Source: Octopus bimaculoides
Lineage: Eukaryota
Assembly: GCF_001194135.2 (NCBI RefSeq)
Contig: NC_068991.1
Location: forward strand, 36,914,444-36,978,443
Direction of reading: 5' to 3'
DNA length: 64,000 nt
Shown here: positions 6,631-63,670 of the stretch, piece by piece
Numbering within the stretch: the stretch's first letter is position 1
Layout: the number at the start of each line of letters is the position of its first letter
The notes under the pieces: generated by a model
Seen by the model: only the letters and a program-made list of their open reading frames with translations
Told to the model about the DNA's origin: nothing
Databases searched by the model: none
Program-made: the position numbers and the translations under genes

Positions 6631-6756
6631 CTAGTCTCGGAGGTCCTACAATGGTTATGAGTACTGTTCTTTCCTCCAGACTTAGCAATTTAAAAAGCAA
6701 AAAATAGCTTCAGCGTAATTTTCTATGGGAATGTTTGAACGAAAAGAAACTATTTT

Positions 6757-7124
6757 AACAATTGCAGCGCGGAAGATGTTTATAAGCTATTTAAGAACAT
6801 ACAAAAAAAACCGTTAGACTCACTTCAACATTTAAATTTAATTTATGTCAAAATATTTTCGTGGCTTTGAAACCGCGACGAAACCTCTGACGAAACTTCG
6901 TGCTACACGAAGTTTTGATGCAGTACGAAGTTTTGTCAGTGAACAGGTCACGGTTTCAAAGTGACGAAAATATTTTGACACAAATTAAATTTAAATTCTG
7001 AAGTGAATCTAACGGGTTTTTTGTGTGTTCTTAAATGGTGTATAAACATCTTCCACGCTGCAATTGTTTTTGTTCCAGCACACTATCTCTGATGAAGTGA
7101 CTTGCTATGCAAGTACATCTCCGT
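6757..7124. mobile_element. Palindromic (fold-back) element with 16-17 bp target-site duplication
   Basis: Arms 6757-6879 and 6947-7068 are imperfect reverse complements, with an inner hairpin at 6887-6939. Flanked by AAAAGAAACTATTTTAA (6742-6758) and AAAAGAACTATTTTAA (7125-7140). Confidence 0.85.
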
Positions 7125-9249
7125 AAAAGAACTATTTTAAATTAGCTGAGAAATGACACATCAGTATCTAAAAATCGATTATGGAATTTCCGAACCAAGA
7201 ACTGAGAATTGAAGAAAATAAATATGGAACAAATCGACTTGTCTAATAAAGTAAATGATAAGATTTCGTTAATCAAGATTGAAGCGTTAAAATTATCAAA
7301 GAGAAAGGATAAGTTAGGGAATTTAACTTTAATCTGTTACAGTTAAAGAAGCGAAATTTTAAAATTGTCTTCCACACACATATTATGAACTTTCGTAAGA
7401 CTACGAGCATATTTCACCGTTCACTAAAGTCACTATTAACAAACAAGAAAATAAGATGACTCTATATCAGTGTGCTTCGTCGCAATGTGACAATGGGCAT
7501 GTGAGGTTTGAAAAGGTGAGGGAAGCAGACAAAATTTCACGTTTAAGATGGTTTCGAACCCATTTAAAACTTGTCCAACACCATGGTGAATATAGAAGAA
7601 TTATATGAACGTAGATATTAGCACGCATCAGTAAATAATTTGTTTGCTAAGTTATTAGCAGGAGCCACAGAATCTTGTGATATTCCTTAACCCGAGGAGG
7701 CTTTGGCTGAGAAAACACAGTGATGTCGAAACATGGGTATCCCAAAGTCCACCTTCCGCTATTGAATCGAGTGTGTTATGAACACACATTCGTCTGAAAA
7801 GAGAGCTATTCTCCAAGGACGAAATACAACAATGATTAGCATATTCACTTTCGAATATACCGGGACGTATTAAGAATGGTTATATATGTCATAGAAACTG
7901 TCTTTTGTTTTCTCATTAACACAGTGGAAAAGGAAAGGAGAAAACATCCCTAATATTTGTTAGGAATATGGCTTATAGCCTTAGAACAAATGCGCTATAG
8001 TTCAACTCTTATATTATGATACATTAGAGAAAAAGTAGTTCAGAGACGCATTTCGGGTGAAAAAATAATACTTCAGTTAACAGATTTAAGGCTGGGAGTA
8101 TTAATAAAACTAGCGAGAAATAAGTAATCGGCGAGGCAAAATTATATCAGCAAATAACTAACATTTTTCCAAACTGTTCAACATAAGCAAGGAACTTGCT
8201 TATGCTAAAGACATTTAAAGTGAGATAGATTTTCCTGAATAACCTTTTATTCGGTTATTCTAACTGTATGGTTAATTTAAACATTAAAAATTAGACACTG
8301 GTTTAGAAAACACAAATTTAATGATTCAATCGCTGTCAGATAGCACTCAGGAGATTAACAATGTCTGTCGAATTAGTTGGCCCTTTATTTTGATATACGA
8401 AGCTAGTTTGTAGCCTTATGGACCGTTGATGATACTATCAATCTGAAGTGCAAATATTTTGTTCACTGCGTTCAAGATTATAATCTTAGTCTCTAAAGGA
8501 ATATGCTCCCCTTGACGAATAAATGTTAGACAATATAAACACTAACTTAAAACAGAAAACAGCAACATACCAAATATGGGACTCGAAAACGATAGCTTTC
8601 TGTGTAATCATCTTACAGATTACACTGCGTGATCATTTGCCGTCCTTTCAAAATTATGTACTATTGAATTTTTTTAATAGTTGAACTCTACTATGTTATC
8701 TCTACAAGATAATTTATCACCCACTTAGCGATAGTAGTATATGCCCAGCATAACAAGGTATTCTGTCATAGTTTGCTGACAACTACGAAGAATAGACCAA
8801 CAAATCAACCAAAAAATACTGAAGCCAACTCTACAAACACTCTTTGATCTAATACATTTTTTATTACAGCTTCTCTGTTATTCGGGCTATCATGGGGGCA
8901 ATAAATAGAATAGATACCATCTCCAATAACATATAGGTCTACTGCATTCTATTACCTAGACCGAGCCCCGTTACATTACTGGAGCGACCAGTTTTGTAAT
9001 CATTTTCTGAATTTTATTTGAAGCCATTTCACTTTACTTATGTGGCTACTATTCTTGCCGTAGATATGAACTTCAACGATACAATTAATTTGAGGCATTG
9101 CTCTTCAGTATAAATTTAAGAAAACATATGTGAAACATGACGTGTTCGTATAAATCGTGTCCTTGTTATGGCAAAGTGGTAGTGCAAAGTTGTTATAGCA
9201 AACTACAGTGTAACAGAGAGAGAAAAACAAGAGAGAAAGACAAGAGAGA

Positions 9250-10901: not shown

Positions 10902-11135
10902 ACCATGTTCTCTCATGTAGTTACACGGAACGACCTAGAAGTTTTGTTGCATCACCTGGATAAATTGTAATCTAGTTGTTTTTGGTAAGCATGTTCACTT
11001 ATGTAGCTATACCGGACGACCTGGACAATTTGTTGGACTACCTGGGTACAATTTAATTTGTTTGGGTAAATATGTTCTTCTGTAGTTTCACACTGACTGA
11101 GGAAGGATTTTTAAACACCTGTGAAAATATTGACT
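10902..11135 (+). repeat. Diverged ~81-86 bp tandem repeat (two full units and a third diverging unit), each starting ATGTTC
   Basis: ATGs at 10905, 10991 and 11072; units 1 and 2 align without indels over 66 nt. Confidence 0.7.
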
Positions 11136-12189
11136 TGTAATATAAGTTGTATCGCAAAGCCAAAGATTTATTAAGGAATACCACGGGATGTTGTACAGTT
11201 CATGCCTTTCTCCAGAGAATTAGAAGTTTGATTAAACTGGAATTATTACAAAATGGAATACGAAGTCAGGGTGTACATCTCACCAGGAACCGAATTTTAC
11301 ACAGAGATGTCAATGTGAAGATATATTAAATATCGATTTGTAAATAGGCATATCAATGTTTATTTCTAGAAAGCAAATGTTGCTACCGAGACATCCATAC
11401 CTTTCTATAGCGCATCGGTAACGAGACTGATATAAAATGGCTGTATGCATCAAGTGAAAGCAGGTCACGAACTCAGGTCTGCAGGAGCAAAGCTCTCACA
11501 TGGTCGATTGCCTTACACCTGTGAAAATATTACTCAGGTACCCAGGAGCTATGATTATATATTTAATACTTTAATAGTTTTATGAAGCTACAGGGTGTCT
11601 AAAAATGTTTTCGTTATGCTTTGGAAGTATCGCTGCAGTAATTGTAAACTAGTTTTCTCTTATAACTTGTCTAATCGTCAGCGTACTTATTGATATCAGT
11701 TTGCCTAATAAATCCCAGTGGTGCAAATTTTAAGATGAAAGTATCAGCGAAATTGTATTATATCTCCCGTAGACAGATAGCAGACAAGAAGATAGACAGA
11801 CAGACAAACTGGCACGCACACGCTTGTGCACATACACACACACACACACATGCATGCATACATACATACATACATACATACATACATACATACATACATC
11901 AGGAGGTCAAACATTTGAAAAAGTTTAACATAGTGTCTTATATCAACAAAATTGTTGAACTTAAACTGAAAGCAAACTGAACTTACATTTTGGTTGAAGC
12001 CACTTAGCCACTAATTCCTTGAATGCCTCACAATCTCATATCATTTCCAGTATAACATTCCGATAATGAGCCTGATTAAAACAAAATAATAATTAACAAT
12101 TTATTATCTGCATAATTACCGGTCACATGTCGCTAGAAATTAATGTTGCAATGATTTGCTTTATACAAAAAAAAACGTAGGAAGTCAGT

Positions 12190-16329: not shown

Positions 16330-17630
16330 AAATTACAATGAAAAGACCAATTTATAAACAACTAAAGTTAGATAAGCAAAAGCGCGAACTTGAACGAGAT
16401 AACAGAAGTTCTAGAAGCAACTGCGACTCATATCATTGCTAGTGTTGCCAGCCAAAAGGAAATACATGGACATGGATCGACTGTAGATAAAAGAAGAACC
16501 GTGGAAGAGGTGGGTCACAAAAGAACATATTTCGTTGCCTGAGGAATTCATCAATAAATTGGCGAAGAATGTGACGTAACTATTTTTCAAAAAGGGTGTG
16601 TCTTAGATATCTCAAATGGGGATGTAGTGGAAATTCAAACTGACGTACGGTAGGTCGTGTAATCCATCATCCTGGAAAACCTGCATGGAAGCATGTACAT
16701 CATCTTCAAAACCGAAGATAAAGTGAGCAGATAAGTGGGGCTAATGAGCCTGATACCTATCCACAAACTGGATAGGTAGAGAGAACAAGGGTGAGAGAAA
16801 TATAAGGGTGACAGCTCAAGATATTGGTAGTGACATTGACTCTTCGTTTATTGTTATCTCTGTGATACAGTATAGATGGATGTCGTACAGTGGCTCCCAA
16901 TATGAAGTGGTCGGCGGATGGGTATATGGACATCAATGTTCCGATTATCCCTAACACCATAAGGCTATCCCAGAACTGTTTACCTTTGAGGAAATAGAAT
17001 TAGAGTTAATCAGACTAATGTGGTAAAACAGAAGATCCAGTTACTGTATGCCAAGTAGCAAAAGTCACTCGAAGCATTGTATCCAGCGGTGGAAATAAAG
17101 GTAAATGGTGAACGGCAACGGTAGACAGCAGCAGATGCAGCAACAACAACAAACGCAGCATGCGGACTCTGAGACGAAGACGATGGTCATTGTGGCTGCC
17201 ACTGTTTCGGTCGCTGCTTTACAGATGGCTACAGCAAAGAGTAATGGAATTGTCACAAAATCAGTGTTTTCAGAAAGAGAAGCCCACGAAATAGGGCACT
17301 GAGAAGCCGTTATGTCGCTTTCTTTAGGATAATACTAACCAGAAGCTCTAAACAGAAGTTGGGTGAGATTATAGACTGGAGAAAGGAATGGAACCGTCAA
17401 GGATTGTAGGGGACAATAAGAAGACAGAAAATAATAAAAAGGAGTCTAGACTTAAATCAAAAAGCCGGCTGGAAATCCCACTCAAAGAGACTTCCTCTTC
17501 CCTGGAATGCATGAATTTCAATGTTAACCGAAAGAAGAGTAATAGCTTAGGGAAACCGCTGAAAGACTGAGAAAAAGAAATGGTTTGTTGCATGAGGAAG
17601 AAATAAAGAATATCAATGAGCTCAAATGAC
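16330..17630 (+). mobile_element. Second, highly degenerate L1/Tx1-like ORF1 remnant
   Basis: RTRVREI segment, CCHC-like remnant CMPSSKSHSKHC and low-complexity Q/T/K C-terminus parallel 13500-14830. Confidence 0.5.
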
Positions 17631-21097: not shown

Positions 21098-22580
21098 GGT
21101 GCTAGGACAATTCGTCCCCGGTTATTTCGTCGTCGATTTGTCTGTCCCCCGTCTTTGATCAATTCATCCCAGATCAATTCATCACTGGGCAATTCGTCCC
21201 AAAATGCTCTTAAATTTGATTTTCGAAGGAAAATTTAGAACAATCACTTTAAAATTAGAATTGCGTTGGACAGTTTTAGATATTCCCCCTTTTTTAACCC
21301 CCTCTCCCCCTCTCTCCCTCTCTCTGTCTTTCTCAAGTATCTGCACTGAGCAGTTAACGAACAATGGTTTTCAAGCAAATCGAATTAAATTTTTTCAATA
21401 CGCCTACTCATCAACATGATTACCTGTAAGAACATAACCTCATAGAAAGACAATTATATATACACACAAAATAAGCAGAATACAGGTGGATTGAAGATAT
21501 ACTGGAGGTGGGAAAATTGTGTGTGCAAGGCGAGACTTCATACAGATGAAAATTATAAAGATCTTAAAAAGAGTGGGATCCATAATCACGCTTCAACTGT
21601 TGCAGAGGTAAACGCAAAGATAATAGTTTCGATTTCCTCTCGTGATCCACTCGCTCAGTTATCGCTAGTGAAGTTCATAATTTAAACGACTGTACATTGT
21701 CGCAAATACCTCCGTCTGCACAGCTTAATAGGAATATTAGACGTCTGAGGCAAGCTGATTCCAACTATCCTGCCACCCAACTTACAAATGTTGGATTTTC
21801 CATTGCAAGTGAATACTCCTACCTTGACATTGATGAAATGTTTTTACAGTATGACAGCAAGATGAAAGATTCAAAATGAATACTAATATTTGCAAGGGAC
21901 AGACTTCGACAGTTAAAACAGCACAAGAACTGGGTGGCAGATGGAACATTTAAGTGCTGCTCTAGTTTACTTTTCAGTTATATATACTTCACAATCAAAA
22001 TAATTTTAATGCCCCACGATTGTTTGCATTGCAGAATGAGGAACCTGATAATATAATTATGGATTTCGAAAAAGCAGCCCATAATGGATTTCTGGAATTG
22101 TTTCCTGGGTTGAATTTGGCATGCTGCTTGTTTCATTTAAGACAAAATGCGTACAGGCATGTTGTGGACTAAAATATAAATATCTTAAAGATGACAGTTT
22201 TAGTTTTAAAATGCGGTGTTTTGTTGTCCTTGCCTTCCTGCCGGTTGATGATGTTGTAGATGGATATGAACAACTTGTAGATGATGATGATATTCCACAG
22301 TCAATTGTATCTTATTTTGAAAATAATTATATAGGACTACCTAGAAGAAGACAGAGGAGACGACGTCTTGAACCTCCATTTTCATTACCTATTTTAAGAA
22401 AAAATAAATATGTAATAATGCAAACCTTAAAATAAACGTTTTTTAATTCAGATATTTGTTCTTCCATTTTCCCTATGATCTCGACGAATTGACTGACGAC
22501 GAATTGACTGACGACGAATTGATCTGGGGATAAATTAAACGACGACAAATTATTGCCGTCGACGAATTGACTGGACACCC
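21098..22580 (+). mobile_element. MULE/Mutator DNA transposon with FLYWCH-type zinc finger, degenerate transposase
   Basis: Imperfect ~100-bp TIRs built of CAATTCGTC / GACGAATTG subrepeats. Motifs YWRW..CVCKARLHT..HNH, ILIFA..WVADGTFK, IMDFEKAA..LFPG..CLFHL, LAFLPVDDV..YFENNYIG. Confidence 0.88.
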
Positions 22581-25108: not shown

Positions 25109-26059
25109 NNNNNNNNNNNNNNNNNNNNNNNNNNNNNNNNNNNNNNNNNNNNNNNNNNNNNNNNNNNNNNNNNNNNNNNNNNNNNNNNNNNNNNNNNNNN
25201 NNNNNNNNNNNNNNNNNNNNNNNNNNNNNNNNNNNNNNNNNNNNNNNNNNNNNNNNNNNNNNNNNNNNNNNNNNNNNNNNNNNNNNNNNNNNNNNNNNNN
25301 NNNNNNNNNNNNNNNNNNNNNNNNNNNNNNNNNNNNNNNNNNNNNNNNNNNNNNNNNNNNNNNNNNNNNNNNNNNNNNNNNNNNNNNNNNNNNNNNNNNN
25401 NNNNNNNNNNNNNNNNNNNNNNNNNNNNNNNNNNNNNNNNNNNNNNNNNNNNNNNNNNNNNNNNNNNNNNNNNNNNNNNNNNNNNNNNNNNNNNNNNNNN
25501 NNNNNNNNNNNNNNNNNNNNNNNNNNNNNNNNNNNNNNNNNNNNNNNNNNNNNNNNNNNNNNNNNNNNNNNNNNNNNNNNNNNNNNNNNNNNNNNNNNNN
25601 NNNNNNNNNNNNNNNNNNNNNNNNNNNNNNNNNNNNNNNNNNNNNNNNNNNNNNNNNNNNNNNNNNNNNNNNNNNNNNNNNNNNNNNNNNNNNNNNNNNN
25701 NNNNNNNNNNNNNNNNNNNNNNNNNNNNNNNNNNNNNNNNNNNNNNNNNNNNNNNNNNNNNNNNNNNNNNNNNNNNNNNNNNNNNNNNNNNNNNNNNNNN
25801 NNNNNNNNNNNNNNNNNNNNNNNNNNNNNNNNNNNNNNNNNNNNNNNNNNNNNNNNNNNNNNNNNNNNNNNNNNNNNNNNNNNNNNNNNNNNNNNNNNNN
25901 NNNNNNNNNNNNNNNNNNNNNNNNNNNNNNNNNNNNNNNNNNNNNNNNNNNNNNNNNNNNNNNNNNNNNNNNNNNNNNNNNNNNNNNNNNNNNNNNNNNN
26001 NNNNNNNNNNNNNNNNNNNNNNNNNNNNNNTATATTATTTATTTAAAGGTCACAATACA

Positions 26060-27120
26060 TGTATTTAAGCGCTACTAATAATTTCATATATTGACAAAAC
26101 TCAAACACAGTCTTCAGGCGTAAACCACATATCATAACGAACTAAAGAAATTGAATAATAGAAAAAACGCGAAAAAACTGAGAAGGCAGCATATAGAAAA
26201 CGCAGACAGTAAACAACTGAAAACGAAAACAAAAAACAAGCTAAAATTTTAAAAAATAAAAAGTAAAAAGGTAAATGAGCTATCCTCCTTAGACCTTAAA
26301 TAATAAGGCTAGAAAGATGTGAAGTCAGTCAGAAATAGACGAAATTTTCCAATTCTTCAGAATATATCTATACATATGCATGCAACTGCTGAAAATTTCT
26401 GACCTGGAGTTCAATAGAGAGTTAAGGATTTTAGATATGAACAGTATCTAGGCTCTTTCAGCCAAACGAAGTTTACATTTATTCGATTCATTCACATAAG
26501 GTATGGACTTCTCAATTACTTTCCATTTAATCACAAGTGCTGTTTCGTCATCTTTCAAAGTCCATATGTAACTAGCCAACTTAGTAGCTTTACTTTTGTC
26601 CCTATGTCAGAAGGAGGCTATGTGATTGGCAAAGCGATTTTTAAATTCTCCTTCACATAATCCAATATAGGTCTTCTTATCAGTTGTATTATTATTTAAG
26701 GTTGCAGTAGCTTCTGCCTCATATGCGATAATCATACACCGTTGGTCAAATGGACAAGACCCTAGGTCGCGACAGTTGTAACTGGATTCAAGCTCTTGGA
26801 TTGACCACGTGTAATGATACTCTTCATATTGGGGCATCAGCTATATGATAATTTCACAGAACGCCTATTAAGTATTTTCCTGTATCTGCGAGGGGCTGGA
26901 AAGTATTTGTCTAGAAGAGACAGGAATCTTTTACCAATATTAGTTTTTAGGTAAAAGGAAAAGGGAGGGGCGAACCAAATAATTTTCCTAGGGATATTTT
27001 TAGGCTTCTTATTATCTTGCTTAATACTAGAGTGGTTATGTAATACTTTATTTTTTATGCCACTAGATCTATTATTAATATCTTGATTATTATTAGATGG
27101 ATTATATGTTAATTTATTTT
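26060..27120 (-). mobile_element. Penelope-like element (PLE) 3' part: Cys-rich linker plus GIY-YIG endonuclease pseudogene and 3' UTR
   Basis: YNCRDLGSCPFDQRC..AYEAE..KTYIGLCEGEFKNRFANHIASF*HRDKSKATKLASYIWTLK..IKWKVI..NKCKLRLAE..LLNSRSEIFSSCMH. Confidence 0.9.
26064..26124 (-). ncRNA. Degenerate type I hammerhead-ribozyme-like motif in the PLE 3' UTR
   Basis: Minus strand TTTACGC-CTGAAGA-[stem II with GU pairs]-GAAA-TTATTAG-TA-GCG-CT-TAAA. Stem I pairs with a 2-nt bulge; the stem II closing pair and stem III are imperfect. Confidence 0.5.
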
Positions 27121-27130
27121 AGTGGCTTCA

Positions 27131-27403
27131 AAGATAAATTAACATATAATCCCTCTAATCATAATCAAAATATTAATAATAGATCTAATGGCATAAAAAA
27201 TAAAGTATTACATAACCATACTAGTATTAAGCAAGATAATAAGAAACCTAAAAATAGGCCAAGGAAAAATTATTTGGTTCGCTCCTTCCTTTTTACTTAA
27301 TATAAAAACTAATATTGGTAAAAGACTCCTGTCTCTTCTAGGACAACCACTTTCCAGCCACTAACAGATACAAGAAAATATTCAATAGGCGTCCTGTGAA
27401 ATT
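27131..27403 (+). mobile_element. Inverted duplicate of the PLE RT-EN linker (fold-back arm)
   Basis: Reverse complement of 26850-27120 across a 10-nt spacer; with frameshifts it encodes RPRKIIWFAPSF...KTNIGKRLLSLL..HFPATNRYKKIFNRR. Confidence 0.88.
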
Positions 27404-27845
27404 GTATATATATATATATATACATATATNNNNNNNNNNNNNNNNNNNNNNNNNNNNNNNNNNNNNNNNNNNNNNNNNNNNNNNNNNNNNNNNNNNNNNN
27501 NNNNNNNNNNNNNNNNNNNNNNNNNNNNNNNNNNNNNNNNNNNNNNNNNNNNNNNNNNNNNNNNNNNNNNNNNNNNNNNNNNNNNNNNNNNNNNNNNNNN
27601 NNNNNNNNNNNNNNNNNNNNNGAACCAGCAAGGGGAAGCTACTGACCTCCCCTGTTCGAAGGTTGTAATGGATAAAGGTTCGTGTGTCATATAGCTAGCT
27701 AGAGGCGATGGCCTCTTGGAACCAATCAACGGCAGCATTCGTCTTATTTTCCTGGACTGCCATGTTAGTTTTCAATAACTATTAATATCCATTACTGTTG
27801 CCCTGTTGCCGTAGTCTCCTTTAGAGATATTTAATAATATTAATA

Positions 27846-29070
27846 TCACGTCATCCCTTAGGTTCTGTCCGAATTTTTAACAAAGAAAACAAGTGATCAA
27901 ATGTAATATTTAATTGAAATTTAATCATTAATGTACTTTCCCTGATTATCTATAACTTCCTTCCATCTATTTATAAGCTTTTTAATCCCATCAATGTAAA
28001 ACTCTTTTTATTTCAAAGCGAAGAACTCTGAAATGTCAGTTTCGACCTACTCTTGACTTGCGAAAGTTATGTCCCCCAAATGATTTTGTAAACTACGAAA
28101 CAACTGGTAGTCTGAAGGAGCAAGGTCGGGAGAATAATGTGGATGAGGATTTTTTCCCAAGCTCTTCGATCTTCTGTGATATGATCTTCGCAGTGTGGGG
28201 TCGCACATTGTCCTGATGAAACAACACTCCTTTTCGATTCACTAAAGCGGGTCTATTATTTCTTCAAAGCTTGGTTCAAACGCTCTAATTGCTGACATTA
28301 GACTTGAGCATTGATTGTTGCATTAGGTGGTAACAATTCAAAGTGAATTACTCCTTTGCAATCCCACCAGATAGAGAGAAGAACCTTTTTTCCATGAAGT
28401 TCACTTCTCGGATGTGGTTGAGCTTTTTCCCTTTTACCAAGCCACTATTTACGACGTTTAACATTTCGATAGAAGATCCATTTTTCGTCACCAGTCACAA
28501 ATCTATCCAAACAGGATGAAATGAGTTCGCGATAATGGAGAGAAGAGCAGAAGTCAACTCGGGATTGCAGTTGCTTTCGGACAATTCATGAGGCACTCAT
28601 TTTCCAACTTTAGGAACCTTTCCAAGTTGTTGAAGATGATGATGGACAGTTGTATGGTTTGAACTAAGCTTTATTGCCAATTCTTCAACTGATAATGCAG
28701 GATTTTCTTCAAGTAATGCCTCAAGGAGCTTATCATCAAACTCAACTGGACATTCTGTTTGATCTTCACCTTCAAGGCTGAAATATCCACTTCTGAATTT
28801 TGCAAATCTTCTTCTGCAAGTTCTTTCATTCAAGCATTCTTTTTCCTATAAACTGAGTGTATGTTTCGAGTCGCTTCGGCTGCAGAGTTTCCTTTTTTGT
28901 ACTCATAAAGCATTATGTGCCTCAAATGCTCTTTGGATACTTCCATGTTAGAGAGGGTTTTAATCAAAGAAATTTTAATTCTATTATTTCGTAAAATAAT
29001 ATTTAATTAGTTTAAATGTACACAAATGCGTAAAAATAATTTTAAATTCCATTAGACATTCTAAAATACT
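27846..29070 (-). mobile_element. Mariner (DD34D) transposon, pseudogenised; only one TIR evident
   Basis: Transposase 28946 to 27921 with stops and frameshifts: MEVSKEHLRHIMLYE, *VPHEL, VTGDEKW, HQDN.RPH, YSPDLAPSDY. TIR-like TCACGTCATCCCTTAGGTTCTGTCCG after TA at 27844-27845. Confidence 0.88.
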
Positions 29071-45344: not shown

Positions 45345-46504
45345 NNNNNNNNNNNNNNNNNNNNNNNNNNNNNNNNNNNNNNNNNNNNNNNNNNNNNNNN
45401 NNNNNNNNNNNNNNNNNNNNNNNNNNNNNNNNNNNNNNNNNNNNNNNNNNNNNNNNNNNNNNNNNNNNNNNNNNNNNNNNNNNNNNNNNNNNNNNNNNNN
45501 NNNNNNNNNNNNNNNNNNNNNNNNNNNNNNNNNNNNNNNNNNNNNNNNNNNNNNNNNNNNNNNNNNNNNNNNNNNNNNNNNNNNNNNNNNNNNNNNNNNN
45601 NNNNNNNNNNNNNNNNNNNNNNNNNNNNNNNNNNNNNNNNNNNNNNNNNNNNNNNNNNNNNNNNNNNNNNNNNNNNNNNNNNNNNNNNNNNNNNNNNNNN
45701 NNNNNNNNNNNNNNNNNNNNNNNNNNNNNNNNNNNNNNNNNNNNNNNNNNNNNNNNNNNNNNNNNNNNNNNNNNNNNNNNNNNNNNNNNNNNNNNNNNNN
45801 NNNNNNNNNNNNNNNNNNNNNNNNNNNNNNNNNNNNNNNNNNNNNNNNNNNNNNNNNNNNNNNNNNNNNNNNNNNNNNNNNNNNNNNNNNNNNNNNNNNN
45901 NNNNNNNNNNNNNNNNNNNNNNNNNNNNNNNNNNNNNNNNNNNNNNNNNNNNNNNNNNNNNNNNNNNNNNNNNNNNNNNNNNNNNNNNNNNNNNNNNNTG
46001 TGTGTGTGTGTGTGTGTGTGTGTTCGTTTGTTTTTGAATTTATGTGTGTCCTTGCATATGTATGGATATGTGTGTGGCATACATATGTATATGACATGTC
46101 TGAGCGTGTGTGTATATACCCGTTCACGAACCTTCTCTTTCTATTGGGTAGGTACTTATTTCTTGTATTCCTGTTCACAACAGTCTGTGTATCACATGTA
46201 ACCGTCTTGACTGTGGAGATTCAACTCAGCACTGTAACAAAATACTCAGTATTTTAAGAAGTTTATGCTGCTTACAGTTACAGCGGTGAATTATAATTAT
46301 GGCGTGAGAGAAGGTTTATTTGGATTCTTTTTTTCAAAATACTGTCGTGTGATTGGAAAAAGAGAGACTGTTCACATGAAAGCCTATATCTCTCAGTAAC
46401 TTAGCAAGAAAAATACTTTGCAACTTTTACAAATGTTCCATGAAAAGTGTATTTTCATTAACACTGTCCAAACAAACGACGCTGTGATATGTTCATAAGT
46501 CACT

Positions 46505-47432: not shown

Positions 47433-48028
47433 CAGTGAAAACCTCAATAAAATGCAAACATAATAGTCCTGTCTATTTGGGACAAGGATGAGAAACAGTG
47501 TACAATTTTGGAAATAAGCTACCCTGTAGATGTTAGCATAAAACTAAAGATCAGTTAGACAGAAAATACCTACGCTGAACTATTGAGAAATCTACAGTTT
47601 CTCTATCCAGATTACAAGTTCAGGTTTATACTTGTAATTCTTGGAGCACTGGGATATGGAACACATTGCCTAAATACCAATCCTGAGAAACTAGGCTTCT
47701 CAAAACCAGAAAGGGGAAAGCTGATTCGAAGACTACAGATCCAAGCCATCACTGGAACTGTAAACATTTGTAAAACTTTCCAGAAGTTTATCATTTAAGT
47801 ATAAATGAGCATGTCTAGATATGCATGTATATGCGTGAGAAGACATACGTAAAACAAGACATACAGTCTGCACATGCACTGATTCCAAATAATGCACATA
47901 TATACGCATACATGCAAAAATACCCGATTGATGTTGCTGAAATTCATATGACGGAGCCTTGGATCTAGGTTAGAAACCGGCTCTTTCTTTATTGGCAAGA
48001 AATCTTGAAATAAGACCGAATAATGACA
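47433..48028 (+). mobile_element. 5'-truncated R4-clade-like RLE LINE ending in (TACA)n
   Basis: ...WDKDEKQCTILEISYPVDVSIKLKI...LLRNLQFLYPDYKFRFILVILGALGY...RLQIQAITGTVNICKTFQKFII* (PD-(D/E)xK-type C-terminus); TACA tracts at 47390-47432 and 48029-48140. Confidence 0.82.
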
Positions 48029-48189
48029 TACATACATTCATGCATGCATGCATACATACATACATACATACATACATACATGCATACATACATACATACA
48101 AACATACGTACATACGTACATACATACATACATACATACATGGTGGCTAGCAACTCGTAAACGAGTATGAACCATCACTGACAATTTAC

Positions 48190-55140: not shown

Positions 55141-55710
55141 CCCAGTGAAAACCTCAATAAAATGTAAACATAAGAGAACTGACATACTAATTGAGAAAGA
55201 GAAGAGAAATTGTGTATATGGGCAGATGTTAACATAAAGCTAAAGATCAGTGAAAAACAAAATACCTGAGCTGAAATATTGAGGAATCTACAGCTACTCT
55301 ACTCAGATTACAAGTTCAGGTTTATACCTGTGGTTATAGAAGCACTGGGATATGTGATACACTGCTTGAATACCAATCTTGAGAAATTAGGCTTCTCAAA
55401 ACCAGAGAGGAGAAAGCTGATTCGAAGACTACAGATTCAAGTCCTCACTGTGACTGTAAGAATTCTGTAAAACTTTCCAGAAGTTAATCATTTAAATATA
55501 TATGAGCATGTCTAGACATGCAAGTATATGTATGAGAAGACATACATAAAGCAAGATATACAAATCTGCACATATACATACATACACACATGCATACAAA
55601 AATACTCTATTGTCGATGTTGAAATTCCAATGAAGGAGCCTTGGATCTAAGTTAGAAACCAGCTCTTTCTCTATTGGCAAGAAATCTTTAAATAAAACTG
55701 AATGACATAA
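55141..55710 (+). mobile_element. Second long copy of the (TACA)n-associated RLE LINE 3' end
   Basis: Colinear with 47433-48028 (LLRNLQLLYSDYKFRFIPVVIEALGY...RLQIQ); starts near the same point (CAGTGAAAACCTCAATAAAATG) and ends in TACA repeats. Confidence 0.85.
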
Positions 55711-55769
55711 TACACACATACATACATACATACATACATGCATTTATTCTATATGCATGCACAGACAGA

Positions 55770-55806
55770 TAGACGGACGGACAGACAGACAGACAGACAG
55801 ACAGTC

Positions 55807-55936: not shown

Positions 55937-57223
55937 TCAGGCTGAGTAAAAAGTAAGCAACGTTTTGAAACATGAACTTCATCACAATATATTTGAACAA
56001 TGCGGGAATTTTATTCATCAAAGTAAGTACCATTACAATCAACACATTTTTGCCAATGAGTTACAAGTTTGTTTATTCCAGTAACATAAGAATCTGGAGC
56101 TCTGAAGCTGAGGAACTCTTTGAACGCACTTTCAGCATCCGTATGATTTTTGAACGCCTTCTCTCGCAGGAAACCATCAAGGTGATTGAAAGAGTAGTAG
56201 TCGGTAGGAGAACGGTCTGGGGAATATGCTGGGTGGGGAAGAACTTTGTAGCCAAATTCCCTCAACTTCTGGAGGGTCATAAGTGAAACGTGTGGTCGAG
56301 CAGTCTTGAAGAATGATTGGCCCTCTAATGTTGACCAATCTGGGATGGAGGAGTAGCAGTTTTTCGTTCAATCTGGCAATTTCATGACAATGTTCCTGCA
56401 GTAATGGGTTTTACGGGTTTTAAGAATTATAGTGGATGAGTCCAGCAGTACACCATCAACCAGTCACCATAACTTTTTTTTTTTTTGAAGAGCTCGGGGG
56501 TTTAGAGAAGGTTTTCGGTGCTTCGTTTTGGTCCAACCACTGCGAAGAACATTTTTTATTATTGTACAGAATTCGCTTTTCATCGCAAGTTACAATACGG
56601 TCGAGAAATGGATCGGTCTGGTTACGGAGAAGAAGCGATGAGCAAATTTCATACCCGCGCATGTTTTTATTTTCATTCAAATCGTATGGTACCCATTTAT
56701 CGAGCTGTTTTGATTTTTCTTTCGCATGCAAATGGTTGTAGGCAGTTTTCTAGCTAACTTGTTCTTTTGCCAGTTCTCAAGTGGTTTTACGTGGATCTTT
56801 CTCAATGACGGTCTTTAATTGACCGTCATCGATGACAGATGCGCATCCGCTATGCTCACCATCTTCAAGGCTCAGGTCTCCACTACGAAACCGTTCAAAC
56901 TATTTTCGATCTGACCACTCACTGGTCATTTCTTATCCAAATATTTCATTGATATTGCAAGCAGTTTCAGCTGCTTTACGTCCTTTTTTGAAGTTGAATA
57001 GCGAAATTGCTCGAATATCGCGCTTTAACAGTTCCATTTCAGATGATTGTAAAAACGGTGAAAAAAATATCAATCTTAATTTATTGATTCATTTGGGCAA
57101 ATCTATGTCTATATTATCAGTCAATTGTAAAATAAAAATGTTTTAAAAAAATTCAAAACTCTGCAAAAATCCGGTACAAATTCTTCATGGTTCAAAACGT
57201 TGCTTACTTTTTACTCAACCTGA
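55937..57223 (-). mobile_element. Full-length mariner (DD34D) element, 1287 bp, pseudogenised transposase
   Basis: 40-bp TIRs TCAGG(C/T)TGAGTAAAAAGTAAGCAACGTTTTGAA(A/C)CATGAA with TA on both sides. Transposase 57037 to 56011 with WVPY, VTCDEK, YSPDRSPTD; contains stops and frameshifts. Confidence 0.95.
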
Positions 57224-57229
57224 TACATC

Positions 57230-57465
57230 GAGGAAGAGCCATTCAAACCATTTAGGAACACACACACAAAAATCTGTTAAATTGACATTTCGTTTATTTT
57301 TTGAGATGTCACAATTATAGTTTCTTTGTATATTTGATGCTGTTAAATTATGTCAGTGATGATCAGGTCGCGGAAATGCGATGAACATTTTGACACGTTG
57401 ACAAATAAACAAAAAATTAATATAACAGTTTTGTATGCTCTTTAATCGCTCTTAAATATGTGTAT
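57230..57465. repeat. Highly diverged relative of the 6757-7124 fold-back element
   Basis: CATTTAGGAACACACAC...GTCAGTGA..CAGGTCGCGG..GCGATGAA.ATTTTGACA...TCTTAAAT parallels blocks of 6790-7035. Confidence 0.45.
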
Positions 57466-62407: not shown

Positions 62408-63670
62408 AAATAATGCGGTTTTTTTCAATTGCCTGAGCTAAAAGTCGGAAGGGGACGGGATAAACTACCTGCATAAACTTGCTATAAAAGCAGGTAGTAA
62501 ATTTAACTTACCTTATTCTTAGTGCAAGTTTTGAAGAGTGCAGTTCGATTTTAACAGTTTTTCTTTCAAAGCTATAATGGAAGTGACAAAATATTCGGCA
62601 TATTTTGCTTTATGAGTTCAATAAAGGCAACAACACGACGGAAAAGGCGAGGAATATTAATGCAGTACATGGGGATCGGACAATAAGCGTAAGCCAGTGT
62701 CAACGGTGGTTCCAGAAATTCCGAGCCGGAAATTACAGCCTACATGATGAGCCTTGCCTTGGATGATCTGTAGAGCTCGACGAGGACGTCCTGCAAACTC
62801 CGGTGGAATAATATCCCTCGTAATTGTTGAAGAACTAACAGAGAACTTGGATTTGGTCATTCAACTATTCATCGACACCTGCGTGCCGTCGGAAAAGTCA
62901 GCAAATTGGGTCAATGGGTTCTTCACAGACTTTCCGAGTCTACTCGCGCGCAGAGAGTGAATGTGTGCTCTTCTTTGCTGTCATATCTCACCAATGAAAC
63001 TTTTTTTTAGACCGAATAGTGACTGGTGGCGCGAAATGGGTTCACTATAAAAATGTCAAGTGCCGAAGACAGTGTGTAGGGAAAGGAAAATCACCGGCAC
63101 CCCAGGCTAACGAAGGTCTTCACCCACATAAGGTGTTGTTATCTGTTTGGTGGGATATGAAAGACTTAGTCCACTTTGAACTTTTAAACCCAGACCAAAT
63201 GATAACAAAAGAGATCTACTGCGAGCAGCTTGAGCGGCTTAAGTCAGCGCGAGAAGCAAAACGACTATCTTTGGTTTCAAGGCGAGAGGTGTTTTTCCAT
63301 CAGAATAACGATCGGCCACATACAGCGAGGATAAAATTCCAAAAGCTGAATCAGTTTCAAAAGGAAATGATGCCCCACCCACCATATTCGCCGGACATTG
63401 CCCCATCTGATATCATTTATTCTGCAGTCTTCAAAATCATTTGGACGGAAAAAAATATGAATTCTGTAAACGAGGTCAGAACAGTACTGGAGGAGAATTT
63501 TTCGTCACAGACACGTAAATTTTGGAAGAGGAGCCTTGCAAGTCTACCAGATAGATGGAAGAGCATTGTAGAAAATGAAGGAGAGTATATTTTAGATTAA
63601 AAAAGAACTTTGTATATCTTTATTGTGAAAAAGAAGCATAAAAAATCGCATTGTTTATGGGATGACCCAA
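62408..63670 (+). mobile_element. Near full-length mariner element; left TIR partly hidden in the N-gap; pseudogenised transposase
   Basis: ATG at 62577; WVLHRL, VTGGAKW, HQNNDRPH, HPPYSPDIAPSD; stop at 63600. Right TIR ...ATCGCATTGTTTATGGGATGACCCAA followed by TA; left remnant AAATAATGCGGTTTTTT. Confidence 0.9.

What the first reader, a model, noticed from the sequence alone, without database searches (positions are those of the whole stretch)
6742..7140. Fold-back element with a 16-17 bp TSD and a half-hammerhead tail: a palindrome that appears to have moved by retrotransposition
Seen: ~120-bp inverted arms, a central switchable hairpin (ACGAAGTTTTG occurs twice and can pair alternatively with CTGACGAAACTTCGT), an asymmetric ~55-nt tail with TCT-CTGATGA followed by a hairpin, and a 16-17 bp direct repeat at both ends. 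Established: cut-and-paste MITEs leave 2-10 bp TSDs, whereas long variable TSDs are typical of target-primed reverse transcription; Penelope-like elements carry hammerheads and generate inverted repeats. Inference: a non-autonomous, PLE-mobilised hairpin RNA element rather than a MITE. A decayed relative lies at 57230-57465.
Basis: partly seen in the sequence, partly recalled or inferred. Interest (0 to 1): 0.7.

Follow-up and report, generated by a model that had tools for sequence, protein, structure and literature searches.

The report
Octopus fold-back retroelement with long duplications
This is a real mobile fold-back repeat in an octopus-like genome that inserts with long, variable target duplications and looks like the head-to-head "pseudo-LTR pair with a one-sided tail" left by Penelope-like retroelements, but its supposed hammerhead ribozyme is a chance heptamer.

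Summary
The sequence features are real. Window 6759-7124 is a 366-bp element: two ~150-nt inverted arms, a 10-nt centre and a 58-nt tail on one side only. It is flanked by a 17/16-nt direct repeat.

The window is octopus-like DNA. A 20-kb piece of the Octopus vulgaris genome (L001) holds a second copy. That copy has the same arms and tail but a different 14-bp flanking repeat, so the repeats are target-site duplications of variable length.

In both copies the two arms share derived changes, including indels: 6-7 concerted sites and no arm-specific ones. Both arms were therefore made from one template at insertion.

The hammerhead idea fails:
- CTGATGA occurs at chance frequency.
- It is not conserved in the second copy.
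- It has no GAAA partner.
- Rfam finds no hammerhead in either copy.

The "switchable" central hairpin is an 18-nt local duplication, missing from the second copy.

The layout is an inverted pair, a tail at one end, a variable junction and a TSD. It matches published Penelope-like element (PLE) insertions, whose Naiad clade lacks hammerheads and occurs in Octopus. No RT-encoding partner could be reached, so PLE membership is inferred, not shown.

The element is of moderate interest and a new member of a known kind.

The parts
6742..6758 (.). Left target-site duplication, AAAAGAAACTATTTTAA (17 nt)
   Evidence: Read directly. It matches 7125-7140 with one indel. The second copy (L001) has a different 14-nt repeat at the equivalent boundary.
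6759..6908 (+). Left arm, the reverse complement of unit X (pLTR-like), starting CAATTGCAGCG
   Evidence: blastn self-match on the minus strand, 83% over 313 nt, E=4e-89. The repeat finder I1/I2. Four-arm alignment.
6909..6918 (.). Centre or loop of the palindrome. The wider centre, 6877-6939, holds the locally duplicated CTGACGAAACTTCGT / ACGAAGTTTTG units.
   Evidence: the repeat finder D6, D7 and I14. The 44-nt central block is absent from the L001 copy, so the junction varies between copies.
6919..7066 (+). Right arm, unit X in direct orientation, ending CGCTGCAATTG
   Evidence: An ATG at 7035 is conserved in 3 of 4 arms. It opens a short frame that runs into the tail. This frame is only weak evidence.
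7067..7124 (+). One-sided 58-nt tail, ...GTTCCAGCACA...CTTGCTATGCAAGTACATCTCCGT, containing the chance CTGATGA at 7089-7095
   Evidence: Conserved in the L001 copy, 86.7% overall with the last 27 nt identical. There is no counterpart at the left end. CTGATGA is not conserved. No other copy of the tail occurs in the window or in L001-L005.
7125..7140 (.). Right target-site duplication, AAAAGAACTATTTTAA (16 nt)
   Evidence: Read directly. The joined flanks give a plausible single empty site.
57226..57458 (.). Older, diverged relative of the same fold-back family, with shorter arms and internal arms about 74% complementary
   Evidence: nhmmer with the family profile gives E=3e-6 (+) and 7e-6 (-). 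Alignment; internal inverted repeat. Neither tail nor TSD is recognisable. The right end runs into a (GGT)n tract.

Best explanation
This is a short, ORF-less retroelement of the Penelope-like (PLE) type.

The unit X is about 150-165 nt and corresponds to a PLE pseudo-LTR (pLTR). At one insertion event it was laid down twice, head-to-head, from a single template. The direct copy carries a 58-nt 3' extension, the "tail".

Integration was by target-primed reverse transcription at nicks staggered by 14-17 bp. Repair of that stagger gives the long, variable target-site duplication.

The fold-back is therefore a by-product of how this class of reverse transcriptase/endonuclease resolves its insertion intermediate (self-priming or double priming). 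It is not a transposase-binding terminal inverted repeat. No ribozyme is involved.

Shown:
- the palindrome;
- the one-sided conserved tail;
- two copies with different TSDs of different length;
- arms of each copy sharing derived changes;
- a variable centre;
- absence of a hammerhead.

Inferred:
- the RNA intermediate;
- the PLE enzyme;
- whether the ORF-less form is inserted as such, or arises from a full insertion by recombination between direct pLTRs.
For: 1. Second copy. An O. vulgaris copy lies at L001 17010->16690, minus strand (nhmmer E=6e-57; alignment). It has the same arms and the same tail, but is flanked by CTGAAAATTCATAA (14 nt; L001 16676-16689 and 17011-17024). The window copy has the 17/16-nt repeat instead. 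The TSD is therefore real, long and variable.

2. Concerted arms. In the four-arm alignment of 117 columns, 6-7 sites, including two indels, have both arms of one copy differing together from both arms of the other. There are 0 arm-specific sites, 0 cross sites and 5-7 singletons per arm. If all three patterns were equally likely, 6:0:0 has probability of about 0.0014. Each copy's arms therefore derive from one template younger than the split between the copies' source lineages.

3. Variable junction. The centre differs between copies. The L001 left arm is about 25-44 nt shorter.

4. Literature on structure. [quoted passage not shown] Naiads lack canonical hammerheads and occur in Octopus spp. 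(PMC8557442).

5. Literature on the rotifer Penelope. It has inverted pLTRs of about 200 bp, a 31-bp tail on one inverted pLTR, an inverted pLTR 37 bp shorter, a flanking TSD, and a pLTR holding the first 12 codons of the ORF. The pLTRs suffice in cis for mobilisation in trans (PMC3846280). Here an ATG sits 11 codons before the end of X, and its frame runs into the tail.

6. Host context. PLEs are abundant and recently active in O. vulgaris (PMC13282606).

7. Other insertions. Another insert with a long TSD (17 bp) lies at 11132-11514, so machinery that makes TSDs of this size operates in this genome.
Against: - No RT/GIY-YIG ORF or full-length element sharing X was found. No further octopus DNA could be reached.
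- Only two good copies plus one decayed copy were examined.
- Canonical Penelope, Neptune and Nematis pLTRs carry hammerheads, and none is present here.
- The tail is 58 nt, against the reported 30-40 nt.
- Rotifer PLE TSDs are 8-10 bp.
- Both copies have nearly the same arm length, whereas random 5' truncation of a 3-4 kb element would vary more. This points to a dedicated short unit rather than truncated full copies.
- Some concerted sites are CpG transitions, which can recur in parallel.
- Within-copy arm identity (88.4-88.9%) is only slightly above between-copy identity (85.6-87.2%).
- The ORF-like frame is open in neither copy: each has one stop, at a different place. It would be open by chance about 16% of the time.
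Confidence: 0.5

Rival explanations
1. A SINE-like hairpin retroposon mobilised by a LINE (RTE, CR1, Dong-R4 or L1-Tx1 type) rather than by a PLE. On this reading the conserved 3' end of the tail is the recognition site borrowed from the partner LINE, TPRT gives the variable TSD, and the palindrome is either a property of the master gene or arises by snap-back of the cDNA.
For: - The TSDs are variable, 14 and 16-17 bp, in two copies.
- The last 27 nt of the tail are identical between copies that are otherwise about 13% apart.
- LINEs have variable-length TSDs (PMC8969392).
- Several LINE clades are active in O. vulgaris (PMC13282606).
Against: - There is no poly(A) or microsatellite at either end.
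- No Pol III head was found: ARAGORN gives 0 genes and Rfam gives no tRNA, 5S or 7SL match.
- The one LINE family whose 3' end is visible, at three loci, ends in ...ACTGAATAATGAC(ATAC)n and is unrelated to the tail.
- The tail motif occurs nowhere else in the 160 kb examined.
- The tail hairpin is not thermodynamically unusual.
- A faithfully copied master palindrome does not explain concerted changes in both arms.
Confidence: 0.2
2. A DNA-level element. It would be either a fold-back MITE of an unknown transposase family or a non-autonomous Helitron2/Helentron-type rolling-circle element. [quoted passage not shown]
For: [quoted passage not shown]
- Non-autonomous Helitron2 copies in Chlamydomonas can carry variable TSDs of 7-19 bp (PMC3627910).
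- Helitrons and TIR elements expanded in octopus (PMC13282606).
- Hairpin heteroduplex repair could also give concerted arms.
- The decayed relative at 57.2 kb shows no tail.
Against: - Helitron2 ATIRs are 8-15 bp and lie 20-30 bp from the 3' end. Here the arms are 150 nt and lie 58 nt from the end.
- Canonical Helitron2 and Helentron insertions give no TSD and sit after T or TTTT. Here both good copies have TSDs, and the junctions read ...TAA|CAATTG and ...CCGT|AAAA.
- The TSD-bearing Chlamydomonas copies are 5'-truncated, one-ended events in a single alga.
- No eukaryotic cut-and-paste superfamily known to me makes 14-17 bp variable TSDs. That statement rests on my own knowledge.
- The ends are asymmetric.
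Confidence: 0.12
3. A hammerhead-bearing element (retrozyme-like, or a canonical PLE pLTR) whose tail holds half of a self-cleaving ribozyme.
For: - CTGATGA is present at 7089-7095 and is followed by a 6-bp hairpin.
- Canonical PLE pLTRs do carry hammerheads (PMC8557442).
Against: - CTGATGA occurs 8 times in the window against 9.25 expected.
- The second copy reads CTCAGAACAGG at that site.
- There is no GAAA within 30 nt of it.
- Rfam at E<=10 finds no hammerhead family on either strand of either copy.
- The hairpin does not abut the box as helix II would have to.
Confidence: 0.02

Closest known systems
Penelope-like element insertions with inverted pseudo-LTRs and a one-sided tail (Penelope/Poseidon, Neptune, Naiad; Arkhipova et al. 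2013, PMC3846280; Craig et al. 2021, PMC8557442)
   Same: Both have a head-to-head inverted pair of ~150-220 bp units. Both have a junction that varies by tens of bp, with the inverted copy shorter. Both have a short extension at only one end and a flanking TSD. In both, the unit holds the first ~11-12 codons of a frame that continues into the tail. The lack of a hammerhead matches Naiad and Chlamys. Naiads are reported in Octopus spp.
   Different: There is no ORF between or beside the units. No RT/GIY-YIG partner was identified. The tail is 58 nt rather than 30-40. The TSD is 14-17 bp against 8-10 in rotifers. No (TA)n target bias is seen at these two sites.
MITEs and fold-back DNA transposons (for example Drosophila FB and Galileo, and the MITEs of Xenopus and Aedes)
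   Same: It is small, non-coding, almost wholly palindromic and AT-rich, and it is dispersed in several copies.
   Different: The TSD is long and varies in length, rather than fixed at 2-10 bp. The ends are asymmetric because of the 58-nt tail on one side. The arms behave as if made from one template at each insertion.
Helitron2 / Helentron non-autonomous elements (Bao & Jurka 2013, PMC3627910)
   Same: Both have an asymmetric inverted-repeat layout with a small hairpin in the 3' stretch beyond the right repeat. Variable TSDs of 7-19 bp are documented for some Chlamydomonas copies.
   Different: The repeats are ten times longer. The distance to the 3' end is twice as long. A TSD is present in both copies. 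There is no T or TT target and no 5'-T/TC terminus rule.
LINE-dependent SINEs with a shared 3' tail
   Same: Both are non-autonomous, have a conserved 3' end, and have variable TSDs from TPRT.
   Different: There is no Pol III-derived head and no A-rich or microsatellite tail. No LINE with the same 3' end was seen. The body is palindromic.
Hammerhead ribozymes of PLEs and retrozymes (Cervera & de la Pena 2014, 2020)
   Same: Only the heptamer CTGATGA in one copy.
   Different: There is no GAAA box and no helices II or III in register. The heptamer is not conserved, and no covariance-model match was found.

Membership tests
Penelope-like elements (PLE-derived insertion) | Pseudo-LTR units arranged as direct and/or inverted (head-to-head) copies within one insertion | tested here: met
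   Inverted pair at 6759-6908 / 6919-7066. The same pair occurs in the L001 copy (I2). Feature as described in PMC8557442 and PMC3846280.
Penelope-like elements (PLE-derived insertion) | A short extension (tail) at only one end of the insertion | tested here: met
   A 58-nt tail at 7067-7124 is present on one side only and is conserved in the L001 copy. It is longer than the published 30-40 bp.
Penelope-like elements (PLE-derived insertion) | Target-site duplication flanking the whole structure, with length not fixed | tested here: met
   17/16 nt in the window and 14 nt in L001, with different sequences.
Penelope-like elements (PLE-derived insertion) | All repeat units of one insertion derive from one template and are identical at birth | tested here: met
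   6-7 concerted sites against 0 arm-specific sites in the four-arm alignment. The margin is modest and only two copies were compared.
Penelope-like elements (PLE-derived insertion) | PLE-clade reverse transcriptase with a GIY-YIG endonuclease, in the element or in an autonomous relative that shares the pLTR | not testable with these tools
   The element has no ORF. The octopus genome cannot be searched by DNA here. Scans of the metagenome, genome and viral collections were empty.
Penelope-like elements (PLE-derived insertion) | Hammerhead ribozyme motif in the pLTR (canonical clades only; absent in Naiad and Chlamys) | tested here: not met
   Rfam at E<=10 gives no hammerhead in either copy. 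The CTGANGA...GAAA pattern is absent.
Hammerhead ribozyme | Conserved core CUGAUGA - helix II - GAAA - helix III - UH | tested here: not met
   Only CTGATGA is present, at chance frequency, and it is not conserved in L001. There is no GAAA within 30 nt and no covariance-model hit.
MITE (cut-and-paste DNA transposon derivative) | Short TSD of fixed, family-specific length (2-10 bp) directly abutting symmetric terminal inverted repeats | tested here: not met
   TSDs are 14 and 16-17 bp. The right TSD lies 58 nt beyond the right repeat. No TA, TTAA or 8-bp repeat occurs at the ends of the inverted repeat.
Helitron2 / Helentron | Insertion without a TSD after T/TT(TT); 8-15 bp ATIRs; 3' ATIR 20-30 bp from the end and upstream of a hairpin | tested here: not met
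   A TSD is present in both copies. The junctions read ...TTTTAA|CAATTG and ...CCGT|AAAAG. The arms are 150 nt. The tail is 58 nt. The tail hairpin has z of only -0.7 to -1.3. Criteria taken from PMC3627910.
SINE | Pol III-type head (tRNA, 5S or 7SL) and a LINE-derived 3' tail or A-rich end | tested here: not met
   ARAGORN finds 0 genes. Rfam finds no tRNA, 5S or 7SL match at E<=10. There is no A-rich end. The tail is unrelated to the LINE 3' ends visible here. A partner LINE elsewhere in the genome cannot be excluded.

The most novel reading that the evidence does not exclude
Octopus genomes hold an abundant family of ORF-less, hammerhead-less "pLTR-only" PLE dependants. Three copies were seen in about 84 kb. 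Only one arm plus the tail would be heritable, and the second arm would be re-synthesised from it at every insertion by self-priming or double priming. Every new copy would then be born as a perfect ~150-bp hairpin. Such a hairpin is a ready-made double-stranded RNA substrate for ADAR editing or RNAi in an animal known for extensive RNA editing.
Probability: 0.3. Interest if true: 0.6.

Novelty: new member of a known kind. Interest (0 to 1): 0.4.

Why it matters
PLE insertion is the least understood retrotransposition mechanism. Its head-to-head repeats and one-sided tails are described but not explained.

A short, high-copy, ORF-less family that preserves exactly those features would be a natural minimal substrate for several questions:
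- how the junction is made;
- how the tail arises;
- how the stagger between the nicks is set.

For genome annotation, such elements are easily mislabelled as MITEs or "unknown". That would inflate DNA-transposon counts in cephalopods.

If copies are born as perfect 150-bp hairpins inside transcribed regions, they would also add to the double-stranded RNA pool that feeds A-to-I editing in octopus.

If the PLE link fails, the finding still records a palindromic element with retro-type TSDs, which is unusual.

Tried and rejected
1. Hammerhead. Rfam found nothing at gathering thresholds over the whole window and no hammerhead at E<=10 on either copy. The heptamer count and the core pattern search were also negative. 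Rejected.

2. Other copies through called ORFs. Exact look-ups of the element's ORFs and flanking ORFs found nothing. A homology search with the 47-aa central ORF gave no candidates.

3. Placing the window in an assembly. Look-ups of two further window ORFs found nothing. The mariner ORF gave only hits of 51% identity or less.

4. Exact-pattern scans. The tail and an arm motif gave 0 hits in the metagenome, prokaryote-genome and viral collections.

5. ENA contigs carrying related RT fragments (L002-L005) are not octopus and hold no copy.

6. Partner LINE. The LINE family visible at 47.5 kb, 55.2 kb and L001 10.1 kb ends in (ATAC)n with an unrelated 3' UTR. The tail has no other match.

7. Paralogous empty site. 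The joined flanks have no second copy in the window or L001.

8. Snap-back with a copy-specific centre. The L001 centre differs by a one-sided 44-nt gap, not a symmetric shortening. A simple \"fold at the 5' end\" model does not fit by itself.

9. The short frame from the 7035 ATG. I did not pursue it.

10. Tail hairpin as a structured recognition element. The z-scores are unremarkable.

11. Replitrons. Variable TSDs are reported only for one algal family, and the paper text I searched does not mention molluscs. Not pursued.
Full report
**What is in the window**

Window 6759-7124 holds a 366-bp element. Its parts are:
- a left arm at 6759-6908;
- a 10-nt centre;
- a right arm at 6919-7066, which is the reverse complement of the left arm. 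blastn gives 83% over 313 nt, E=4e-89 (repeat finder I1 and I2);
- a 58-nt stretch at 7067-7124 that has no counterpart on the left, the "tail".

The whole is flanked by AAAAGAAACTATTTTAA (6742-6758) and AAAAGAACTATTTTAA (7125-7140).

As RNA the element folds into one long hairpin at -195 kcal/mol, against -77 +/- 5 for shuffles (z = -22.9).

The arms are about 150 nt rather than the 120 stated.

**Source organism**

The window is eukaryotic. It has about 35% G+C, microsatellites, fourteen runs of N, mariner and MULE remnants and LINE 3' ends.

A query built from two RT-fragment ORFs matched a "Hypothetical predicted protein [Octopus vulgaris]" at 87% identity (P0057). Its locus, L001, is 20.3 kb of O. 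vulgaris chromosome OX597824.1.

I treat the window as Octopus or a close relative. The species itself is not established.

**A second copy settles the target-site duplication**

L001 contains a copy of the element on its minus strand, 17010->16690 (nhmmer E=6e-57; sequence; alignment).
- It has the same two arms, 118 nt at 89% complementarity.
- It has the same tail, ending ...CACTTGCTATGCAAGTACATCTCCGT.
- It is flanked by a different direct repeat, CTGAAAATTCATAA, at L001 17024-17011 and 16689-16676.

Two independent loci thus share the same asymmetric boundaries but carry different flanking duplications of 14 and 16-17 bp. That is the signature of a target-site duplication of variable length.

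Isolated non-simple 14-mers repeated at this spacing are only a handful per 64 kb. Chance coincidence at both loci can be dismissed.

The left end differs by 1-3 nt between the copies (CAATTGCAG against TTGCAG). The right end differs by 3-5 nt (CCGT against CCGTAATCT). Neither end carries a poly(A) or a microsatellite.

No cut-and-paste superfamily that I know of makes TSDs of this length and variability. That statement rests on my own knowledge. LINE-type and PLE-type target-primed reverse transcription does (PMC8969392; PMC3846280).

**The hammerhead and the switchable hairpin**

The hammerhead reading fails on four counts:
- CTGATGA occurs 8 times in the window against 9.25 expected.
- The O. 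vulgaris copy reads CTCAGAACAGG at that position.
- The core pattern CTGANGA-N(4-30)-GAAA is absent from the element.
- Rfam finds no hammerhead family at E<=10 on either strand of either copy. It finds only generic long-hairpin miRNA models far below their thresholds.

That criterion is met.

The 6-bp tail hairpin is conserved in sequence but is not thermodynamically unusual (z -0.7 to -1.3).

The two ACGAAGTTTTG units are an 18-nt tandem duplication at the centre (D6). The 44-nt central block that contains them is missing from the second copy. The "switch" is therefore not a family feature.

**The arms of a copy evolve together**

I aligned the outer ~120 nt of all four arms and classified 117 columns:
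- 86 columns are invariant.
- 6-7 are "concerted": both arms of one copy differ together from both arms of the other. Two of these are indels.
- None is arm-specific (left = left and different from right = right).
- None is crossed.
- Each arm has 5-7 private changes.

If the three informative patterns were equally likely, 6:0:0 has probability of about 0.0014.

A palindrome that is copied faithfully from a master should accumulate left/right differences shared between copies. None is seen. Each copy was therefore born as a nearly perfect palindrome whose two arms came from one template, and the arms have since drifted about 6% each.

Caveats:
- Only two copies were compared.
- One or two concerted sites are CpG transitions, which can recur in parallel.
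- Within-copy identity (88.4-88.9%) exceeds between-copy identity (85.6-87.2%) only modestly.

On the scale of Bonar et al. 2026 (Jukes-Cantor distance 0.065 ≈ 18 My; PMC13282606), about 6% per arm suggests an insertion roughly 15-20 My old. This age is an inference.

**Comparison with known systems**

The combination found here is described for Penelope-like elements.

Craig et al. 2021 (PMC8557442) report:
[quoted passage not shown] - Naiads lack canonical hammerheads and occur in Octopus spp.

Arkhipova et al. 2013 (PMC3846280) describe a rotifer Penelope with:
- pLTRs of about 200 bp and an adjacent inverted pLTR that is 37 bp shorter;
- a 31-bp tail on one inverted pLTR;
- a flanking TSD;
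- a pLTR that holds the first 12 codons of the ORF, extended by the tail;
- pLTRs that suffice in cis for mobilisation in trans.

Here the L001 left arm is about 25-44 nt shorter than its partner. An ATG at 7035, conserved in 3 of 4 arms, lies 11 codons before the end of X. Its frame runs through the tail, and each copy has one stop at a different place. That last point is weak, because the frame would be open by chance about 16% of the time.

**What could not be shown**

No RT/GIY-YIG element bounded by X was found, because the octopus genome cannot be searched by DNA with these tools:
- ORF look-ups were empty.
- The homology search with the central ORF gave no candidates.
- Three collection scans were empty.

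The only LINE family whose 3' end is visible ends in (ATAC)n and is unrelated to the tail. The tail occurs nowhere else in the ~160 kb examined. PLE membership is therefore an architectural inference.

**Rivals**

- *LINE-dependent hairpin SINE.* This fits the TSDs and the conserved 3' end. It lacks a Pol III head, an A-rich end and a visible partner. It does not explain the concerted arms or the one-sided tail.
- *Helitron2/Helentron-type element.* This shares the asymmetric-repeat-plus-3'-hairpin layout, and variable TSDs of 7-19 bp are documented in Chlamydomonas (PMC3627910). Those are exceptional one-ended events. Helitron2 repeats are 8-15 bp and lie 20-30 bp from the end, and canonical insertions have no TSD and a T-rich target. 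None of this fits here.
- *Ordinary MITE.* This fails on TSD length, TSD variability and end symmetry.

**The 57.2-kb relative**

Window 57226-57458 matches the family profile at E=3e-6 and is itself an inverted repeat, with arms about 74% complementary. It is older. It has no recognisable tail or TSD, and its right end runs into a (GGT)n tract. It confirms that there is a family but adds nothing on mechanism.

**Verdict**

The TSD is now supported by an independent copy.

The reading "moved by retrotransposition, probably PLE-type, not a MITE" is the best-supported one: about 0.7 for a TPRT-type insertion in general and about 0.5 for PLE specifically. It stands for reasons other than the hammerhead, which is a chance heptamer.

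Most likely this is a new, ORF-less member of a known kind of insertion structure. A TE specialist would find it recognisable rather than astonishing. The concerted-arm result and the apparent abundance (three copies in about 84 kb) make it a useful minimal model for the unexplained PLE insertion mechanism.

Noticed in passing
window 11115-11531: A 383-bp insert (11132-11514) is flanked by a perfect 17-bp direct repeat, ACACCTGTGAAAATATT. It has no internal inverted repeat and no relative in the window or L001. It is probably another TPRT-type insertion with a long TSD.
   Followed up: partly
window 26850-27403: A second, unrelated palindrome of about 555 bp has arms of about 275 nt (85-92% complementary) and a 10-nt loop at 27121-27130. 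Its right end abuts a (TA)n tract and a run of N that starts at 27430. Rfam finds no hammerhead in it. (TA)n targets and assembly breaks are features reported for Naiad PLEs.
   Followed up: partly
window 26448-26837 (minus strand): An ORF with one in-frame stop starts 12 nt from that palindrome. It carries a C-x-C...C-P motif followed by IAY...YIG...R...H. It belongs to a widespread family of mostly 100-280-aa proteins (258 representatives at E<=1e-3). Three of ten relatives tested hit Pfam GIY-YIG (PF01541), one above the cut-off and two just below it. The ORF itself has no Pfam or PDB match. It may be a detached PLE-type endonuclease domain, but this was not shown.
   Followed up: partly
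window 62998-63597 (+), 56014-56749 (-), 28600-28845 (-): Mariner-type transposase remnants are present: Pfam Transposase_1 at E=3e-21 and E=7e-5, plus an HTH_48-like N-terminus. The closest database relatives are only 46-51% identical.
   Followed up: partly
window 47559-48100, 55248-55790; L001 10150-10650: Three copies of one LINE 3' region end in ...CTATTGGCAAGAAATCTTNAAATAANACTGAATAATGAC followed by (ATAC)n. O. vulgaris annotates an ORF in one of them as a hypothetical protein (P0057).
   Followed up: partly
window 21966-22169 (+): A fragment of a MULE transposase domain (Pfam PF10551, E=3e-6).
   Followed up: no
L001 tail, about 16715-16735 (minus strand), versus window 6943-6953: The L001 tail contains GAACAGGTCAC, identical to an 11-mer in the inner right arm of the window copy. 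About 0.004 such matches are expected by chance. The tail may be a diverged partial repeat of the start of unit X.
   Followed up: no
window, 14 runs of N (for example 25109-26030, 27430-27621, 45345-45998): There are many masked or unassembled stretches, mostly next to microsatellites. The low G+C readings at 24-26 kb and 44-46 kb are artefacts of these runs.
   Followed up: yes
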